The position numbers and the translations under genes are program-made. A DNA stretch of 62,917 bases, the filler included, from Pelomyxa schiedti (lineage: Eukaryota > Protista > Evosea), in the NCBI GenBank assembly GCA_020536535.1. It is 12 parts of 12 records of this genome, joined end to end, with 100 filler letters (N's around TTAATTAATTAA, not from the genome) between each part and the next. Parts side by side here need not be neighbours in the genome. Positions count along the whole stretch, not along the records: positions 17,134 to 27,074 come from JAHLWZ010001282.1; 11 more parts are not named here. One strand, given 5' to 3'. Under the pieces are notes generated by a model, which saw nothing but the letters and a program-made list of their open reading frames with translations, did no database searches and was not told where the DNA came from. This document shows, one piece after another, positions 17,134 through 27,074 of this stretch (its first letter is position 1; each line of letters opens with the position of its first letter).

Positions 17134-17426
17134 AGGCTGCGGCGCCGCAGGCAGGAGGGCCCGCGCGGGGCGCACTCGACCTCGAGGACGAAGCGCGTGA
17201 GGGTGGGGGCCACCCACTCGTGCCACAGGGCGCGGACCAGCGCGGCGGCTTGGTCGCGGCCCATGACGCGGAACAGGGCGCTGCCGGCGCCGCACCGCGC
17301 GATCGCGGCCCCCGCGGCGAGGGCGCCGAGCTGCCCGCGCGTCGTCGTAGGCTCCTCGCCGCTGGTGTCTGGGGAAATGTCGAAGTAAGTGTCGGAGGTG
17401 ACGCCGGTTACGTTCCACGTTGCCAT
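17134..17426 (-). CDS. 5' fragment of an expanded-family member (truncated)
   Basis: RGQLGALAAGAAIARCGAGSALFR...LVRALWHEWV matches the family N-terminal motif. Confidence 0.65.
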
Positions 17427-17613
17427 TCGGTTTTCCAAGGAAACGCCCCAGAAAGTGATGTGTTTCTTAAGGGGGTTCCACCTGTTGACAATCCCACATG
17501 CCCACCCACGATTGCGCCAGCTCCTCCTACACCCACCATTTTGGAGAGGGATTCAGCAAGAGGGGGAGACCGACCTACCAATCAAAAAAGTTGTGATTGT
17601 CGTTGGGTGCACC

Positions 17614-19536
17614 ATGATGTCAGGGTCAGGCAGCGGGGCCGACGAAACGGTGTCGGGAGGGGCATCGTCATGCACCAGCACTAGCAGTAGCAGTAGCACT
17701 AGCAGTGCGCCCACCACCACGACGACCACGGCGGCGGCATCGTCCTCGGCCGCGGGGGTGGGGGAGTACGACGAGGGGCGGGTGAGGGAGGCGACCAAGG
17801 AGGCGGAGGGGGCGCTGGGGCGGGGGGAGTACGAGGCCGCTGCGGAGATACTGGCGGGGGTCTGCGAGGCAAAGTAAGTCCGTCCCCGCGCCACGCCACC
17901 CCCCCCGTCATTGTTCCCCCCCCATCTTTGCGACTTGCTTGGGTTTTTTGTTTTTTTAATTTGAACAACAGCAGTGTTGTATCATTTATTTATTTATTAT
18001 TTTTTATTGTTGATTCTTTTTTTTTTACTTATACACTAGGACTATAATACATATTATTGTTCTTTTTCATCCCACCTTTTGGCAGACAGAAAAAATTTGG
18101 AGAACTTTCCCCGGAGCTAGTGGACTGTTTTGTTTTATATGGCCGGGCTATGTTGGGGCGAGTGAAAGAGTTACCATGCTCCTCGTTACTTGACGTAAAA
18201 CCTGGAGCCAAGCAGGCTCAAAAAAAGGGAAAAGAAAACGATAGCAGTGAGGAAGAGGGAGGTGATGACAACGAAACCACAAGATTGGAAAAGACTGTGG
18301 TGAGCGACTCTGATGACAGCAACAGCGATGGTTTTCTATCTTTGCCATTTTCCTTCCTTACTTACCTTACTTCAGAAGAAGGTGGTCTTAGCAGCGCCGC
18401 AAAGGTATCAGTCAAAGCGGCTTGGGAGGTGCTTGAAGTTGCTCGTGTGATTGCTGAACGTCATTTTGCTAATACCGCGAAACTTGCGGACATACATATC
18501 TCCATTGGCGATGTATGCCTCGAGTCAGGTGCGCTGAAAATTAACGTACCGCGATTTTTCACCACTTCATATAGATATGACAGATCAAGCCCATGAAGAG
18601 TACTCTAAAAGTTTGGAGTTGAGGACAAAACTTCAGGCTGATGATCATCGGTCCATGTCGGAAGTGTAAGAGCTTCACATACTGTCTTTCGTTGACCAAC
18701 AAAGAAACTAGACACTTCCTTCTCGGAACTGCATGTGCTATGAGTAAATCGCACACAACGAAGGAAGCCATTCAGCACTACTCTACTGCTAGGGAACACC
18801 TTCAGATTGCACGTGAAGCGGCTCTTAAAAAGTCAGATCTCAAGACAGTTCAGGATTTAGATACTTTTATTGATGACATTGACAACAGGGTTCGCCATTT
18901 AACACCTTATCAAATTCTTATGTTCCCAAACAGATTAAAGACTTGCAGACCTCAGTGATGGACCTAGTAAAAAGTACCATTGCCCAAATGTTGCCCCTCC
19001 CGCCGGAGCCGGATTTCCCGCCAACGACCTCCTCCAGCGTTACCACAATAACCGCAACATCAATAACAACTTCTCCCGCAAAACCCACATTGCCAACGCC
19101 AACACCAACACCGGCCCCGGCAAATGGAATTCCCACAACACCAACCCATGGAATTCCTCCAACCCAATCACCATCACACACCAACGCAAACACCAACACA
19201 CCACAAGAACAACAAAACACCACCAGCTCCCCCGGACAAGCCACAACGCCAGCCGCAGCTGCAGCTGCAGCCCCGGCATCACCATCAAGTCCCCCAGTCA
19301 AGATAGTGAAGGACTTTGGTGTTGTGGGCAGGAGAACAAGAAGAGGAGGTTCCACGGCTGCCTCCACAACCCCACAACGCCCCCCTCCTCACTCAGCAAC
19401 ATCATCATCAGCAGCTGCAAGCTCCATAGAATCATCACCTGAATCCTCACTCCTTGGCAAAAGGCCTCACACTGATACTCTCACATCGTCGCCACAACAA
19501 CCCACTGCTCCACAACAAAAAGCACACAAACACTAG
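17614..19536 (+). CDS. NASP/Hif1/Sim3-like histone chaperone (SHNi-TPR), spliced
   Basis: GEYEAAAEILAGVCE..KKFGELSPELVDCFVLYGRAML, acidic insertion, AAWEVLEVARVI..LADIHISIGDVCLES..HEEYSKSLELR..RSMSEVHFLLGTAC, and basic C-terminal GKRP/KAHKH. Confidence 0.85.
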
Positions 19537-19779
19537 TGGTACATAGCCAGCATCAGTACCAAACAAATAACAAATTCAGATTCGCAACAGATCGTCTTTT
19601 ACCGTAACGTCCCTTCCGCGCAACCAAAAATTAAAACAAAGAAAAATAAGAGAAAAACGCTCGAGGCGAGCCACAACAAGCAACAAGGGAAAATTAAAAA
19701 CAACAGCGAAGAGGTAGTCGAAAAAATTGGAATATTTGCCAACTACTGTTAGCCCAAAACAGGTCTCCAACAATCCCCA

Positions 19780-22700
19780 ATGTCGATGTTGAAGCTGTCC
19801 AGTAATTCCTCGGGACTCTTCAAGTCCCTTTCGCGGTTGGCGACGCAACCAAACCTTGGTTGGCTCTTTTCCCCTTTTTTTCCCCTTTTTTTCCCCCCTT
19901 TTTTCCTTTTTCTCCCTTTTTTTTTTCTTTCCCCAGCTACTTGCTTTTGAGGTTTCACATTTTTATTATCTAAATAACAACAGCGTTTGATAAGGAGTAC
20001 CTTGTTGCATCAAGGCTTGTACTGGAAGCACTGGCCATCAGAAAGAAATATGCAGTGGCTGGCGGTTTCGATTCACCTTCACCTTCCGACTCTACTGCTG
20101 CTGTGGCTACAACCACTGCAACCTCAGGTTCAACAGGGACTCCGCCTGAACGAACATACTCTTTTGCGGATGTGGAGGGTGTCGTTCAGGCGTTTTACTC
20201 TACACCTGGTTCCTCCGCTAAAAGTGAGTCACATGTCGCCGTCTTACCACTCTTCTAAGTTTCTAAACAGCTCCTCTTTCTGCTATCCCCACCTTTGTTG
20301 ACTACATGCGAGATTTTGATCGCATTATGGAGGTTACTATCCTTCTCCACAGTAAAACCTAATTTCAATAAAGATAACTAGCAAAGGGGAAGTTGTTTCA
20401 TTTTGCAGTGCTCGGCTACAGGTTTAATGATTTATAATATCTAAATTGTTTCACACCTATCTAGATACTGGAGTACCAATTCAGATTCCACAAATTACTA
20501 AACTCACTCCTTGAATTACAGGATAAAAAAGTGAGTATGATGTAGAATGTATAACTTCTCATATCAATTGAACAGGTTAACGGGCAAGATTTCATGTCAA
20601 CACCCAAAGTGGACACACGTGCGTCCAACAATCAATAATAGTCAGAACATAACACTCAATGTAGATGTTCACCTTGCTGCTGCTATGACTGAAAAGCAGA
20701 TGCTTGAATTTATCAAAGAAAAGCTGAAATCACCCGTAAGAGTGCATTTGCTGTTATCTTTATAATTCCAAAAGGAAGTGGTCATTGTAAAAAATGGCAC
20801 ACCTATGAAACTGGCTGAAGTTTTTCAGCATCTTAATATAGACACCGCAAAGTTAAATGTGCACAGTCTAGATGTTCGTGCTGGCTCCAAGACATTCCAT
20901 CGATTTGATAAATTTAATGAGTGTTACAATCTCTTTGGTGATTCGTATGTGAGCCCTGAAGAGGGACTTTTTTTTTGACCTCTTTTTAAATAGTGACTTG
21001 CGTACCATCTTTTTGAAGACTGCAAACCAAATTTCTGGAAAATACTTCGCGGAGATTACTCACCAAGTGCAGCAGAGCCCTCCTATTCCTTTTTAATGCT
21101 CCAACAGGTTTTCAACAGACTACAGGAAACAAATACCAAAGCCGAGTTCCGTATGTCGATTTATGGAAGGTATTTTTCTCTATTATCCTTTTCTTATGTT
21201 TTTAACCTGTTTCCATTCTTCAAAGATCCCCAAAGGAGTGGGACGAACTTGGTAATTTTGTATTTTGTTGTTTGATTTTGCTAATTCAATTTTTCAGCTT
21301 TGTGGGTGAAGACATTTAATCTCCATTCCCCCTGTAACAGGTGGATGATACAAATTCCCAGACTGTTTAACCAGTTCTGTGGAAAGGGTATCACCAGTTT
21401 TTCGCAGTACATGGACAGTATGTTCCCTTCTACACATTTTGTCTTATGATTTTTCAGATATTTTTCTACCCTTGTTCGAGGTTACAGCCAATCCCAGCTC
21501 ACATCCTCTCTTGGAAGAACTGTTACAGGATATCAGTGGTATCTGTTTATTTTTATTTTCCTCCATCCACGCTTACCTCGAGACTTATAGGATTTGATTC
21601 AGTTGACGATGAAAGTAAACCAGATGGCAGAATTGAGTATATTTGCAATAATGTTATTCAGTATTCCTTATCGTTCTTCATGTAGGTTTTCGTCACCATC
21701 AACCTGGAATACCCCTGTAAATCCACCATATTTGTACTACATGTACTACATGTACGCCAACATTGCTAGTCTCAATGCCTTCCGGGCTGCTAAAGGCCTT
21801 AGTGCGCTTTTTCTTTATTCAACCTCATCTTACAGCCTCAAGGCATATTCGACTATCGACCACATTCGGGAGAGAGTGGAAGTGAAAAACATCTTTCTGC
21901 AACATATTTGACAGCCAAGCACATAAACCACGGCATCAATCTCGCTGCTAATACCTCTCTACAATATCTGTGAGCCCTCCACTTCCAACGAACGAAACTC
22001 ATTCTTGTGTATACCAGGTACTACCTCACGCAGATTGGATTGGCAGTCTCTCCGTTGAGTAATAATTCGTTATTCCTCAACTATTCCGAAAATCCTTTCC
22101 CGGTCTTTTTCAAGAGGGGTCTAAATGTATGTTTGCTGGGATATCAGCACTTCTAACTGCCAAAAGGTTTCATTGTCTACGGACGATCCACTTCAGGTTT
22201 TCCTTCGTTACAGCTCAAATCTGAATTTACTTTCTGTAGTTCCACTCGACACAATCTCCTCTTATTGAAGAGTACGCCGTTGCTTCCAGGGTATGTTAAA
22301 ATCCTTTTTTGCCAGTCAACTGTCTTACTGTCGTCGGAAAACCTAGCGCTGGCGCTTTAATGACATTGACATGGACGGTATAGCAAACGAAAAGTCACCA
22401 ATATCAACTAATCTTCCCTAGAAATTGCACGGAACAGTGTCATTCAAAGTGGCTTCCCTCAATCCGTCAAAGAAGCTTGGCTTAAGTCCTTCCGGAAACC
22501 AACTTCCACAAGTAGGGAAACAAGATGTTTCGTAGATTAACTTCTTGCAGAACCATCCATGAGACTCTCGTTCCGGCAGTTGCTTATGGATGATGAAATT
22601 GCGATGATCAAGACTCTCTCGACCTGGACAGGTCCATCACCTCCAGTCATTAGGGGATCAATCAAAGCTCCCAGAAAAGATCTTGGTAACACAGAGTGAA

Positions 22701-25245
22701 TCAAACTCACTTCTAATGCCTTGTTAGAGGATGTTGAAACTGCAACTGCCATTTCCCAAGTTTCCACGGCATTTAAGTTACGAAGTCAATATATGACACC
22801 TCTTGATGTTGCAGAAGAAGACCTTTCCATTCCCTGCATTGTGTGTAAGTAATGTTCTTGTAGTGGCTAATTCGCACAGCATATATTTAAGATGCACAAT
22901 GGAATTATGCAACTTTTTGAAAGTCAGAAAGGTAGAGTCTCTGTTATCTCTGTGTTCTACTCCTAACAGATTGTCACAGTTCTGTGCAGTCATGATGAAG
23001 TTGAGATGGCTAATATGCATTGCGTTGATTGCAACAGGAATTTTTGCAAAGAGTGTTGCACTGTGCTGCATAAGTCACCTGCGAGTCACAACCACCGCAT
23101 TACTCCAATTAATGGTACGCCGTTGAATTGGATGTATCACACTGAACCAACATTCTTTAGTTGCAAGCCCAATGTTCTCTCCAGTACAATGGACAGAATT
23201 TGTCAATGATTACAAGCATCTAGTCGCAATATCATGCAATGGCCCTGCGCATTCTTTCACTTCACATCGATTGTCTATTCTTCGTGAAAGGTTTTCCATT
23301 ACCTTTGTCACATTACACAGCCTTAAATAAATTAGATTCCGCTTCCATCGGGTGACAAAAGACAAAGTGGAGGAAGCAAAAGTTAAAGAATCCGGGATTG
23401 ACTTCTACAATGTGACCAAAGTTGACACACATGTTCACGCCAACCGAGCCATGTCTGCAGAGCAACTGTATAATTTCATAATAGAAAAATTAAAGACAGA
23501 GGGTGATGTATGTATCTCTCTATTTCATTTCAAAAAAGTAACGGCATTAGCGGGTTGTGTTCAAAGATCTCAAGGGGGAGAAGAATGTTTCCCTAAGAAG
23601 GGCCTTTGTTCTTCTTGGATTGGATCCTGACCACTTGTCAAGAGATGCCTTAGGAGTCATGGTTTGTTGTTTTTTCACAGCCAACCTCGAATAACTCACA
23701 AGTTTTACAGTCCGGAGAAGAAACTTTCGAACGATTTGAAGTTTGGTTGGCCAAATATGATCCCTTTGGAAAGCCAGAACTCCGTAATTTGTTCCTGAGG
23801 GTCACTGAGAATGACATTGAAGGTGCTTACCTTGGGGAGTTGATAAGCACCACTGTGTTTAAGACACTGAGTACTACTCCATCAAACAAGACTGAACTGA
23901 GGGGCTCAATATCCGGCGGGTTGTGTTATTTTTTATGCTGTAACTCTCTATCCTAAATTAATTATTTCTTTACAGGGATCTCTCAGAGTGGGATACTCTT
24001 GCTAAGTGGGTTATACGTTACAATTTACTTTCTCCAAACAATAAATGGAGCATCCCCATACCTCGTGTGTATGGAGAACTGCTAAGAAAGGGGAAAATAC
24101 ACAATTTCCAAGAGTCTCTTCACAGTATATCCCAGATTTGTTATGTAAACATTTTCCTTTACCCATAGTGCACAGATATTTTTCAGCCCCTGTTTGAAGC
24201 GACGCAGAATCCTGACAAACATCCTGAGTTGACAGTATTCCTCCAAAATGTTGGAGGATTTGACACCATTGGTGATGAACATACAGTTGATGCTTCCTTA
24301 GACTCGGAGTGTGTTTGTATTTTTCAAAAGGTATCTATCTCACTTGTTGCAAGGTTACCTCTACCACAAAACTGGACTTCAGAAAAAAGTCCTCCCTATG
24401 GCTATTGGTTGTATTACCTTTACGGTATTGTTTCTATTAGACAATTTCTTCTTTTTACCAACTATTCATAGCAAATATTCGAATATTGAATTACTTCCGG
24501 TCCCTGAGAGGAATGAGTATGAGAACCCGAACATTTCTTTTTTCCCTAACCCTAATATTTTCCAGATGTGTTTACATTCAGGCCACACTGTGGGCAGTGC
24601 GGAGAAGTGTTTCACCTTGCAGCTGGTTACCTTCTCTCGGATGGAATTACACATGGAACCAACCTCGAAAAGTCACCTGTTCTCCAATATTTGTATATTC
24701 CCAACCCTCACTCTTTCTGGACTATACCCAGCGTTTTTTTAAAGGTACTACCTGAGCCAAATCGGAATTTCTTGCTGCCCACTCAGTGAGAGCAGTCTCT
24801 ACACCCGGTATGAGAAGTCTCCGTTCAACCGGTTCTTTGAGAAAGGCCTAGTAGTCACACTTTCCACTGACAACCCAATGCAACTCCATCTCACCTCTGA
24901 GCCGTTACTGGAGGAATATGCTACTGCGGCCCAGGTATATCTGATTACTTGTCAACCCGGAACTTTCTTTCCCTCATCATCGCTTTCTAGATGTTCAAAC
25001 TCAGCACCACCGACCAATCGGAATTGGCACTCAACAGTGTTATTGCATCCAGTTTCTCTGCTGTGGAAAAGGAGAAATGGATAGGCTCGTTTGTGGACTT
25101 CCCGGAATCCAACGGTAAGTATTCCTGACCACGTTCACTTTCATTGACAACAATAGATATCACAATGACCAATGTCCCGACTCTCAGGCTCGAATTCCGC
25201 TATGACTCGTGGCTTATAGAAATGACCCTCAACGACCTCCTCTAG
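19780..25245 (+). CDS. AMPD: AMP deaminase with two tandem AMPD domains and a B-box zinc finger in the second, about 30 introns; start approximate
   Basis: Domain 1: [51 protein letters not shown]. Domain 2: [44 protein letters not shown]. The junction at 22420-22850 splices in frame. Confidence 0.88.
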
Positions 25246-25279
25246 TAATTATTGGCTAATCAAAACACCAAGACTTAGT

Positions 25280-26935
25280 TCAGGATTTATTCCCCTTTGG
25301 TGATTTTTGTGGTGTTAGTGTCCCGGCACTGGGTTTGTGTCTCTTTGGAGTTTGCACAGGAATGGAATTCTCATCATCAACATCAATAGGGTTCAGTGGG
25401 TGCTCACCTTGTCGCTGCTGAGCACTTGTTGAAACTGCAGTTGTGGAGGTTTGTGGTGTTATTGCTTGTGATTGGGAGCTTGTGGTAGAATTTGAGGTTT
25501 CGATTGCTTGGGGTGATTCTGATTGTGATTCTGAGTCGGATGATGACGACGAGGAATCATGTAGTTTGCACCTGGGGCGTGGAATTGGTGTGTGTTTGAT
25601 GTGGGGCATCGGTTCCTCAGTGTGCTTTGGGTAGAATTTTCTGGCTACTTTTTCTATACAAGTGGGTACTTGGCACCTGTTTGTTTGGTTTTTTGTGCCA
25701 GTTATATCTTTGGTAAGGAGGACATACAAAACAATGCATCGTCCTGTGTGATCTCTCTTGGCATATGTCTCAATAAGGGACTCCATAAAGGCCACTTGCT
25801 GGTCAGAGGTGAGCCAACTCCACTCCTGGTCACTTATCAAATGAAAGAAAGGGTAAAAGAAAGGAATACCTTGACATAGAAATCACTGGCTTTCCAAGAA
25901 GAGGTCTTATTCTTGTTGGCCGCAAGAAGTGCCTGTAGTTGGTTCCTTGTGGAGAGCGGTGTTGCTTCATTGAAGAACCGAATGCACCGAATTCCTTGCT
26001 TCCAGTGACGTTGGGAAGCCGTCGGACACTGTGAAGACAGCTCAGCCAGGATTTGATCTTTCGACCAATCCGGGTGGTTTTTCCTGTTGAAAATGAGTCG
26101 GTTGTTGGAGGAGGAGAGAAGGAACAGAGGGCTACACACTCGATTTCTTCTTCTTTGCTGCATATTGTGACAAAGTCGAAATATGTGTTGGATGTTTGGT
26201 GGTGGATCCGTAATTTGAGTTGCTCGTTTGCCGTCTGCAGTGCCTGGTTTGTTTCTGTCAGAGTTTTCAATTCTTCTTTTAGTCTGGTGTTCTCTTTCAG
26301 AAGCCCAACAACAAACTCCTGGATGGCCGTACATTTGTCAATGTGTGTCACTTGTTCTTTTCTTTTTCCATTCCATTTGCACAAAAAGACAGAAAACGGG
26401 CACCGAACCTTATCGGTGAGTGAATATGAGATGGAATGGAGAGATGTACCATGGTTTCCGGACAGATGGTGCTGTGATCTGCTTGGTCTTTTGGGGCAAT
26501 ATGCTGACCGCATCCTTGCGGGCATTCTAAAGGATATGTTACTTATAATGAAAATAAACGGTGCAGGGAAAAAAAAGGAAACCGGAGTTGGGCACACCAA
26601 TTGGGCATGACAGTTTGTGCTCCATCAAGGATTTCCGGGGCACAGAGGCTAAGCATTGCTCACAGTGCACGGCATTTCCCGGGCAGGTTTCGTTGTGGAC
26701 CTTCAAATCTGAAGGTGCAACGAGTTCCTCACAACCATTTGGGCAATCTTTTTTTTTCCCCCCGTAATTACTGTTTAAGTAATTAAAGTACATTGAAGTA
26801 CACACCAGTTGGACAGTGATTATAGTGATCAATGACATCCACCCTCTTCACAGATATCTGACATGATGGGCAAACCACAAGTAAACCGTTCAACTTTGTC
26901 GAGTCAGTGAATGAATTGAATGTGAAGTAGGTCTA
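25280..26935 (-). CDS. TRAF-type zinc finger and coiled-coil protein, spliced; 5' part (probably RING) missing beyond the contig end
   Basis: KLNGLLVVCPSCQISVKRVDVIDHYNHCP|DCPNGCEELVAPSDLKVHNETCP..VHCEQCLASVPRKSLMEHKLSCP; coiled coil LLKENTRLKEELKTLTETNQAL. Confidence 0.7.
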
Positions 26936-26954
26936 AAAAAAAAAACATTCCTAA

Positions 26955-26960
<6 letters not shown>

Positions 26961-26985
<25 letters not shown>

Positions 26986-27074
26986 CAAAACAAAACAAAA
27001 CAAAACAAAACAAAACAAAACAAAACAAAACAAAACAAAACAAAACAAAACAAAACAAAACAAAACAAAACAAA
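26961..27074. repeat. (CAAAA)n microsatellite at contig end
   Basis: More than 20 perfect units, directly visible. Confidence 0.98.

What the first reader, a model, noticed from the sequence alone, without database searches (positions are those of the whole stretch)
19780..25245. Tandem AMP deaminase: an intact domain fused to a probable pseudo-enzyme domain
Seen in sequence: two complete AMPD domains read as one frame when GT-AG introns are removed (..[32 protein letters not shown][26 protein letters not shown]..). Domain 1 keeps all signature motifs (DTHVH, DSVDDES, RPHSGE, STDDP). Domain 2 keeps the Zn ligands (DTHVH, RPH, STD), but its catalytic Glu codon is CAG/Gln (24595-24597, RPHCGQ), STDDP has become STDNP (24872-24874), and DSVDDE has become DTIGDE. 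Established: the Glu in HxGE is the catalytic acid/base of amidohydrolase-fold deaminases. Inference: domain 2 is a non-catalytic nucleotide-sensing or allosteric module in a covalent pseudo-heterodimer. I recall long, apparently duplicated AMPDs in kinetoplastids, so the duplication itself may not be unique.
Basis: partly seen in the sequence, partly recalled or inferred. Interest (0 to 1): 0.8.

Follow-up and report, generated by a model that had tools for sequence, protein, structure and literature searches.

The report
Tandem AMP deaminase with dead half
This amoeba gene encodes two AMP deaminase units in one protein: the first looks fully active, while the second keeps its fold and metal site but lacks two catalytic residues. 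The layout is already in public databases and is shared by other amoebae and euglenozoans, but I found no paper that describes it.

Summary
The piece is the 9941-bp Pelomyxa schiedti contig that carries KAH3731959.1, "AMP deaminase", 1241 aa. That deposited protein maps exactly onto 19780-25245 (+) as 37 exons and 36 GT..AG introns.

- **Unit 1** keeps all 82 residues that are near-invariant in canonical AMP deaminases.
- **Unit 2** keeps 72 of the 82, including all four zinc ligands. It has Gln for the catalytic Glu (CAG, 24595-24597) and Asn for the second Asp of STDDP (AAC, 24872-24874). RNA contigs carry both codons.

Tandem AMP deaminases are common, at about 45 cluster representatives. 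In Amoebozoa the C-terminal unit is degenerate. In Euglenozoa it is the N-terminal unit. In Entamoeba invadens the fusion is one uninterrupted ORF, and its unit 2 is orthologous to the Pelomyxa unit 2.

The weak point is the junction. The 42-nt intron that removes the in-frame TGA is not covered by any RNA contig the tool listed, and it has the weakest splice signals in the gene.

That unit 2 is catalytically dead is a strong inference. An allosteric or sensor role is untested. Interest is moderate.

The parts
19780..25245 (+). Whole coding span of the tandem AMP deaminase gene: 37 exons, 36 introns, 1241 codons plus TAG
   Evidence: Exact mapping of deposited protein P0001 (KAH3731959.1) onto the window. 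Fourteen introns are confirmed by RNA contig joints.
20151..22630 (+). Unit 1, a canonical AMP deaminase (P0001 aa 83-607) with DTHVH, DSVDDE, RPHSGE and STDDP
   Evidence: HMM domain score 690 bits. 82 of 82 near-invariant residues are kept. Pfam PF19326 hits its exons.
21872..21874 (+). Unit 1 catalytic Glu codon, GAG (E445)
22686..22727 (+). The 42-nt junction intron (GTAACA..GTTAG). It contains the in-frame TGA at 22697-22699, and its removal joins unit 1 to unit 2
   Evidence: Used in the deposited model. Its size lies within the 39-56 nt range of the other introns. It has the weakest splice score of the 36 introns. No listed RNA contig crosses it.
22739..22795 (+). Conserved N-terminal helix of unit 2, motif A..L..A..LR..Y (P0001 aa 630-648). 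The same motif stands before unit 1
   Evidence: R and Y of this helix are invariant, and the flanking EDVE region aligns with the uninterrupted Entamoeba sequence. There is no in-frame ATG between the TGA and this helix.
22985..23098 (+). B-box-type zinc finger inserted in the N-terminal arm of unit 2 (P0001 aa 683-720; exon 22980-23114)
   Evidence: Pfam B-box families at E about 7e-4, below the cut-off, for the window exon. Above the cut-off in the orthologous linkers of P0002, P0005, P0007 and P0009. Seven Cys/His ligands are invariant in six proteins. The exon is present and spliced in RNA contig X1 record 1.
23166..25227 (+). Unit 2, an AMP deaminase-like unit (P0001 aa 728-1236) with DTHVH, DTIGDE, RPHCGQ and STDNP
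   Evidence: HMM domain score 617 bits. 72 of 82 near-invariant residues are kept. Ten introns are confirmed by RNA joints.
24595..24597 (+). CAG (Gln1076) at the position of the catalytic Glu
   Evidence: RNA contigs of three runs are identical here.
24872..24874 (+). AAC (Asn1151) at the position of the second Asp of STDDP
   Evidence: RNA contigs of runs X2 and X3 are identical here.

Best explanation
One Pelomyxa schiedti gene (19780-25245, + strand) encodes a 1241-aa protein built from two full AMP deaminase units. Unit 1 is an ordinary, presumably active, zinc-dependent AMP deaminase. Unit 2 keeps the whole fold, all four metal ligands and the second active-site His. It has lost the Glu that shuttles the proton (now Gln) and the Asp next to the metal-binding Asp (now Asn). 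It most likely cannot deaminate AMP. It probably serves as a non-catalytic partner that packs against unit 1 the way two subunits pack in ordinary AMP deaminase oligomers, making a covalent pseudo-dimer. A B-box zinc finger sits in the arm that links the units and may mediate further contacts. What is shown: the architecture, the substitutions, expression and splicing of unit 2, conservation in other Amoebozoa, and orthology with Entamoeba unit 2. What is inferred: loss of activity, the intramolecular pairing, and any ligand-binding or regulatory role.
For: Two PF19326 units are present. The deposited fused model maps exactly onto the window. Unit 1 keeps 82/82 and unit 2 keeps 72/82 near-invariant residues; unit 2 has E->Q and D->N with the HxH, H and D metal ligands intact. 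The PDB alignments place Q and N at the catalytic Glu and the second Asp. In E. invadens the tandem protein is a single uninterrupted 3753-nt ORF. Soliformovum and Pyxidicula Trinity transcripts also carry both units. Residues on both sides of the Pelomyxa junction align with continuous Entamoeba sequence. Pelomyxa unit 2 groups with Entamoeba unit 2 at 99/85 support, and a Pelomyxa-only duplication is rejected at AU p = 0.0016. The end branch of unit 2 (0.71) is no longer than that of unit 1 (0.75), so unit 2 is under constraint. The AlphaFold2 model of both units has pLDDT 84.9 and pTM 0.78, and matches AMPD2 8hu6 with a TM-score of 0.87.
Against: No listed RNA contig crosses 22617-22909, so the fusion in Pelomyxa rests on the deposited annotation and on homology. 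The junction intron scores lowest of the 36 introns, and 94 of 149 GT..AG pairs taken from inside exons as decoys score at least as high. It holds an in-frame TGA, so retaining it would give a stand-alone unit 1. Loss of activity is inferred from residue identity alone. P0005 and P0007 unit 2 still have the Glu, so the ancestral unit 2 may have been active. I could not inspect coordinates or predicted aligned error (PAE), so the pseudo-dimer packing rests on the pTM value only.
Confidence: 0.65

Rival explanations
1. Two adjacent genes. Unit 1 ends at the TGA at 22697-22699. Unit 2 is a separate gene starting at the ATG at 22793 (MTPLD...) or further downstream. The fused model would then be an annotation artefact.
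For: The junction intron has the weakest splice signals in the gene and cannot be told apart from decoys. No listed RNA contig spans it. Genes are tightly packed here: the next gene, on the other strand, ends 35 nt after the stop.
Against: Orthologues carry both units in one ORF without any intron (E. invadens) or in single transcripts. The conserved LR..Y helix of unit 2 lies upstream of the first possible ATG, and there is no in-frame ATG after the TGA. The tail of unit 1 and the start of unit 2 align with continuous Entamoeba sequence. The 42-nt size fits the 39-56 nt range of the other introns.
Confidence: 0.1
2. Both forms are made. The weak 42-nt intron, with its in-frame stop, is spliced only partly. 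The gene would then yield a stand-alone active AMP deaminase when the intron is retained and the tandem protein when it is spliced.
For: Lowest splice score of the 36 introns. The in-frame TGA sits 11 nt into the intron. The natural AMPD C-terminus (..[14 protein letters not shown]) lies just upstream of the junction.
Against: There are no RNA data on this intron. Entamoeba has no intron at this point and so no such switch. Splice scores from a 35-intron matrix are noisy.
Confidence: 0.15
3. Unit 2 is still an enzyme, with a different substrate or mechanism. It might be another purine or nucleotide hydrolase or deaminase using the intact metal site, with the clade-specific Glu in CPLSES (N->E) replacing a lost carboxylate.
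For: All metal ligands and 72/82 core residues are kept. The paired change N->E (SPLSNN to SPLSE.) with D->N is conserved in all five amoebozoan unit 2s. P0005 and P0007 keep the catalytic Glu.
Against: Pelomyxa and E. invadens P0010 have Gln at the proton-shuttle position. From established knowledge of adenosine and AMP deaminases, this Glu is needed for catalysis. Other unit 2s lose further ligands: P0009 lacks HxH, and P0004 has Ala.
Confidence: 0.1

Closest known systems
Canonical eukaryotic AMP deaminase (human AMPD2, PDB 8hu6; Arabidopsis FAC1, PDB 2a3l; Pfam PF19326)
   Same: Both units have the full AMPD fold (Foldseek TM-score 0.85-0.87), the HxH, H and D zinc ligands, and the N-terminal LR..Y and GV motifs. 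Unit 1 has every catalytic residue.
   Different: There are two units in one chain. Unit 2 has Gln for the catalytic Glu, Asn for the second Asp of STDDP, and Gly in DSVDDE. A B-box finger is inserted before unit 2.
Entamoeba invadens 'AMP deaminase, putative' XP_004261648.1 (P0010, 1250 aa)
   Same: Same order of parts: intact unit 1 (RPHCGE, SSDDP), linker with B-box, then unit 2 with RPHCGQ. Its unit 2 is orthologous to the Pelomyxa unit 2.
   Different: One uninterrupted ORF rather than 37 exons. STDTP instead of STDNP. More core residues are lost in unit 2 (63/82).
Euglenozoan tandem AMP deaminases (Diplonema papillatum KAJ9449103.1, Papus, Euglena, Entosiphon)
   Same: Two AMPD units in one chain, one of them degenerate.
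   Different: The polarity is reversed: the N-terminal unit is the degenerate one and has lost zinc ligands (e.g. DNSVR, RPNSGE). There is no B-box in the linker. The tree does not resolve whether they share an origin with the amoebozoan fusion.
Yeast AMP deaminase-like paralogues YJL070C and YBR284W (from my own knowledge; not confirmed in the paper library)
   Same: AMPD-fold proteins that lack catalytic residues and are thought to be inactive.
   Different: They are separate genes, not fused to an active unit.
Active/inactive deaminase pairs such as ADAT2-ADAT3, and the inactive dihydroorotase-like domain of yeast Ura2 (from my own knowledge)
   Same: A catalytically dead copy is kept as an obligatory partner or structural module of an active enzyme.
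   Different: ADAT has a different fold and its two chains are non-covalent. Ura2 belongs to a different amidohydrolase family.

Membership tests
AMP deaminase (PF19326), unit 1 | Significant match to the family profile over the catalytic domain | tested here: met
   Exon-wise Pfam hits down to E = 8.7e-17. A locally built AMPD HMM gives 690 bits over profile positions 13-550.
AMP deaminase (PF19326), unit 1 | Zinc ligands HxH, H and D, plus the catalytic Glu and the second Asp of STDDP | tested here: met
   DTHVH, RPHSGE and STDDP are present, and 82/82 near-invariant residues are kept.
AMP deaminase (PF19326), unit 1 | AMP deaminating activity | not testable with these tools
   Needs an enzyme assay.
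AMP deaminase (PF19326), unit 2 | Significant match to the family profile and fold | tested here: met
   Exon-wise Pfam hits down to E = 6.3e-26. The local HMM gives 617 bits. The model matches 8hu6 and 2a3l.
AMP deaminase (PF19326), unit 2 | Zinc ligands HxH, H and D | tested here: met
   DTHVH, the His of RPHCGQ and the first Asp of STDNP are present.
AMP deaminase (PF19326), unit 2 | Catalytic Glu in RPHxGE and second Asp in STDDP | tested here: not met
   Gln1076 and Asn1151 align with Glu and Asp of 2a3l and 8hu6. Unit 2 is therefore a family member by descent and fold, but not by its catalytic residues.
B-box zinc finger (PF00643 / PF22586), linker | Eight-ligand Cys/His(/Asp) pattern | tested here: met
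   The pattern C-x2-D/C-x8-9-C-x2-C-x4-C-x2-C-x4-H-x4-7-H is present, with seven ligands invariant in six proteins.
B-box zinc finger (PF00643 / PF22586), linker | Score above Pfam's gathering cut-off | tested here: inconclusive
   The Pelomyxa segment scores 20 bits against cut-offs of 24.1 and 27. The orthologous linkers pass: P0005 30.5, P0007 28.9, P0009 27.3 and P0002 26.3 bits.
B-box zinc finger (PF00643 / PF22586), linker | B-box fold | tested here: inconclusive
   pLDDT is 43-62 over this part of the model, which was built without metal and from a shallow alignment.

The most novel reading that the evidence does not exclude
AMP deaminase has repeatedly been turned into a covalent heterodimer: at least once in Amoebozoa, once in the organism of P0011, and possibly separately in Euglenozoa. 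One half is then frozen as a metal-containing, substrate-binding but non-catalytic nucleotide sensor that controls the active half. In Pelomyxa the weak 42-nt junction intron with its in-frame stop would add a splicing switch between a free enzyme and the sensor-coupled form, with the B-box finger recruiting partners.
Probability: 0.15. Interest if true: 0.7.

Novelty: new variant of a known kind. Interest (0 to 1): 0.45.

Why it matters
AMP deaminase sets the adenylate energy charge and is regulated allosterically by ATP, GTP and phosphate, and it normally works as a homo-oligomer. A widespread natural version has one subunit covalently attached and catalytically silenced. It could be used to separate the catalytic and regulatory roles of a subunit, and it would add to the known pseudoenzymes. 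The degenerate unit is C-terminal in Amoebozoa and N-terminal in Euglenozoa. At least one separate duplication kept both halves intact. This suggests recurrent selection for the arrangement. Entamoeba and kinetoplastid-related parasites, which depend on purine salvage, carry such proteins, so their biochemistry has some applied interest. For this window, however, the gene is already annotated and the finding is an architectural reading, not a new gene.

Tried and rejected
- **RNA across the junction:** the single read-laying run listed no contig over 22617-22909.
- **Splice scoring:** a splice-site matrix could not validate the 42-nt intron, which scores like the decoys.
- **Linker word search:** searching P0001:560-780 found only the protein itself.
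- **Literature:** four searches for tandem, pseudo or two-domain AMP deaminase, and one for the yeast AMPD-like paralogues, found no description.
- **N->E and D->N as an independent co-variation signal:** rejected, because nearly all co-occurrences belong to one clade.
- **Common origin of the amoebozoan and euglenozoan fusions:** deep nodes are unresolved in the careful tree.
- **Joined model:** I sent no self-joined spliced model to any search tool. Exons were searched one by one by reference. Whole-protein steps used the deposited protein P0001 that the search returned. Short in-script joins were used only to check reading frames.
Full report
**What is there**

The piece (17134-27074) is eukaryotic DNA with very short introns. 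Exon-by-exon Pfam scans give AMP_deaminase (PF19326) matches in two separate series on the + strand. One series spans 20766-22537, covering profile positions 214-589. The other spans 23331-25242, covering profile positions 156-623.

I searched all proteins with one unit-2 exon (window:24746-24931). The best hit was P0001, 1241 aa, with two matched stretches. P0001 is KAH3731959.1, "AMP deaminase [Pelomyxa schiedti]". It sits on a 9941-bp contig, which is exactly the length of this piece.

P0001 maps onto the window without a single mismatch, as 37 exons and 36 GT..AG introns from 19780 to the TAG at 25243-25245. So the gene and its fused model are already public. According to the genome paper, the model came from Augustus, improved with PASA and EVM using transcriptome data (PMC8887013).

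**The substitutions**

| Feature | Unit 1 | Unit 2 |
|---|---|---|
| HxH zinc ligands | DTHVH | DTHVH |
| DSVDDE motif | DSVDDE | DTIGDE |
| Zinc His and catalytic Glu | RPHSGE (E445, GAG, 21872-21874) | RPHCGQ (Q1076, CAG, 24595-24597) |
| Zinc Asp and second Asp | STDDP (D520, GAT, 22185-22187) | STDNP (N1151, AAC, 24872-24874) |

Alignment to solved structures puts the Gln on the Glu of RPH(S/C)GE, and the Asn on the second Asp of STDDP, in Arabidopsis AMPD 2a3l and human AMPD2 8hu6. By my own count from the chain numbering, these are Glu662 and Asp737 of the Arabidopsis enzyme. The zinc ligands are His391, His393, His659 and Asp736.

I took the 82 alignment columns that are at least 95% identical in 34 canonical units. 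Unit 1 keeps 82 of them and unit 2 keeps 72. The ten changes in unit 2 include the catalytic Glu, the second Asp, the second Asp of DSVDDE, and the first Asn of SPLSNN (now Glu).

RNA contigs of three single-cell runs cover the RPHCGQ exon with no differing letters, and two runs cover the STDNP exon with none. The changes are therefore real.

**Is it one protein?**

RNA contigs confirm 14 introns of 40-56 nt. Four are at the 3' end of unit 1 and ten are in unit 2. A further contig shows the B-box exon spliced on both sides. All of these agree with P0001.

The critical intron, 22686-22727 (42 nt), removes an in-frame TGA at 22697-22699. It is not crossed by any contig the tool listed. Its leave-one-out splice score is the lowest of the 36 introns: 3.1 bits against a median of 9.8. 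It is no better than GT..AG pairs picked from inside exons as decoys. The other introns that would keep the frame are 75-132 nt, outside the range seen in this gene.

Independent support comes from relatives:
- In Entamoeba invadens the tandem protein P0010 (XP_004261648.1) is encoded by one uninterrupted 3753-nt ORF.
- Trinity transcripts of Soliformovum and Pyxidicula also carry both units.
- The Pelomyxa residues on both sides of the junction (..KAPRKDL|[22 protein letters not shown]) align with continuous Entamoeba sequence.
- The conserved LR..Y helix that opens every AMPD unit lies between the TGA and the first in-frame ATG. A separate gene for unit 2 would therefore lack it.

I put the fusion at about 0.85. 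A real possibility remains that the weak intron is partly retained, which would give a stand-alone unit 1.

Exon 22980-23114 encodes a Cys/His cluster, [33 protein letters not shown].
- It hits the Pfam B-box families just below their cut-offs.
- The same insert is present in the linkers of Soliformovum, both E. invadens paralogues and two metagenomic relatives.
- In those linkers it passes the Pfam cut-offs, and seven zinc ligands are invariant.
- It sits between the GV motif and the P..F..D motif of the N-terminal arm of unit 2.
- Unit 1 has no such insert, and neither do the euglenozoan linkers.
- The structure model is not confident in this region, with pLDDT of 43-62.

**How common is this layout?**

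About 45 of the best 150 cluster representatives are proteins of 900-2300 aa with two AMPD units.
- **Amoebozoa** (Pelomyxa, Entamoeba, Soliformovum, Pyxidicula and unnamed metagenomic ones): unit 1 is intact and unit 2 is degenerate.
- **Euglenozoa** (Diplonema, Papus, Euglena, Entosiphon, Artemidia): the N-terminal unit is the degenerate one. In many of these proteins both units have lost zinc ligands.

The careful tree gives these groupings:

| Grouping | Support (ultrafast bootstrap / SH-aLRT) |
|---|---|
| Pelomyxa unit 2 with the Entamoeba unit 2s | 99/85 |
| The same plus P0005 unit 2 | 100/97 |
| Five other amoebozoan unit 1s (Pelomyxa and Entamoeba unit 1 not included) | 100/98 |
| Euglenozoan unit 1s | 100/100 |
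| Euglenozoan unit 2s | 100/99 |
| The two intact halves of P0011, as sisters | 100/100 |

The P0011 result means at least one separate duplication. Deep nodes are open, so a common origin of the amoebozoan and euglenozoan fusions is undecided.

An AU test rejects a Pelomyxa-only duplication at p = 0.0016. The caveat is that I named the tested group after seeing the tree.

Within amoebozoan unit 2s, D->N in STDDP and N->E in SPLSNN are shared by all five. The catalytic Glu is still present in P0005, P0007 and P0009. It is Gln in Pelomyxa and in E. invadens P0010, and Ala in P0004.

**Mechanism**

An AlphaFold2 model of residues 62-1241, built with 32 tandem sequences, has mean pLDDT 84.9 and pTM 0.78. 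Its best structural matches are AMPD2 8hu6 (TM-score 0.87) and 2a3l (0.85). A pTM that high for a two-unit chain suggests a defined mutual arrangement. I could not inspect the coordinates, so this is only a suggestion.

The end branch of unit 2 (0.71) is no longer than that of unit 1 (0.75), and unit 2 keeps its metal site. It is therefore under selection and is not decaying.

It is established for adenosine and AMP deaminases that the Glu of HxGE is the proton shuttle. The most likely reading is a covalent pseudo-dimer: unit 1 does the chemistry, and unit 2 is a non-catalytic structural or ligand-binding partner.

**Comparison and novelty**

The protein is an AMP deaminase by descent and fold in both units. 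Unit 2 fails the catalytic-residue test. Four literature searches for the architecture found no description of tandem AMP deaminases or of an AMPD pseudo-domain. However, the proteins are deposited, and their two-domain Pfam architecture is precomputed in public data.

I rate it a new variant of a known kind, of moderate interest.

I handed no self-joined spliced model to any search tool. Exons were searched by reference, and whole-protein steps used the deposited P0001.

Noticed in passing
window 26953-27074: A perfect (AAACA) repeat of about 24 copies runs to the very end of the contig. It could be a microsatellite that broke the assembly, or a chromosome-end repeat.
   Followed up: no
window 25280-26838, minus strand: ORFs of a convergent neighbouring gene on the minus strand end only 35 nt after the AMPD stop codon. 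One ORF (26542-26838) has a TRAF-type zinc finger, below the Pfam cut-off (24.9 vs 27 bits), and another a coiled-coil-like stretch.
   Followed up: partly
window 19859-19983: The first intron of the deposited model is 125 nt, against 39-56 nt for the other 35. It holds a pyrimidine-rich repeat, (TTTTCCCCTTT) x5. The first exon and the start codon at 19780 may therefore be mis-modelled.
   Followed up: no
window 22686-22727: The intron that joins the two units has the lowest splice-site score of all 36 introns and contains an in-frame TGA. Partial retention would give a stand-alone active enzyme.
   Followed up: partly
P0011 (1354 aa, Logan contig, organism unknown): A tandem AMP deaminase in which both halves keep all catalytic motifs and are each other's closest relatives (100/100). 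This is a separate, younger duplication.
   Followed up: partly
P0009 (E. invadens XP_004254868.1): In this second Entamoeba paralogue both halves are defective, in different ways. Unit 1 has RPHCGK, STDKP and has lost the HG His. Unit 2 has lost the HxH zinc ligands but keeps the Glu. It may be a complete pseudoenzyme.
   Followed up: no
P0014-P0018, P0021, P0032, P0033, P0036-P0039, P0055 (mostly unnamed ENA/Logan proteins; the tested ones (P0014, P0015, P0017, P0018, P0021, P0033, P0036, P0037, P0039, P0055) group with Euglenozoa): These are tandem AMPD-like proteins of up to 7575 aa in which both units have lost zinc-binding His residues (e.g. DTNVR, RPSCGE, RPQCGE). They form a sizeable clade of apparently fully non-catalytic AMPD-fold proteins.
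   Followed up: no
window 24553 and 25248: The DNA contig of run X4 differs from the window by a 2-nt insertion (AA, inside an intron) and a 3-nt deletion just after the stop codon. The deletion is also seen in RNA run X2. This is probably allelic or cell-to-cell variation in the single-cell data.
   Followed up: no
window 17389-19536, plus strand: The upstream neighbour on the same strand is a Ser/Thr/Pro/Ala-rich low-complexity protein with no Pfam family above cut-off. GC content falls from 0.65 at the left end of the contig to about 0.40 over the AMPD gene.
   Followed up: no
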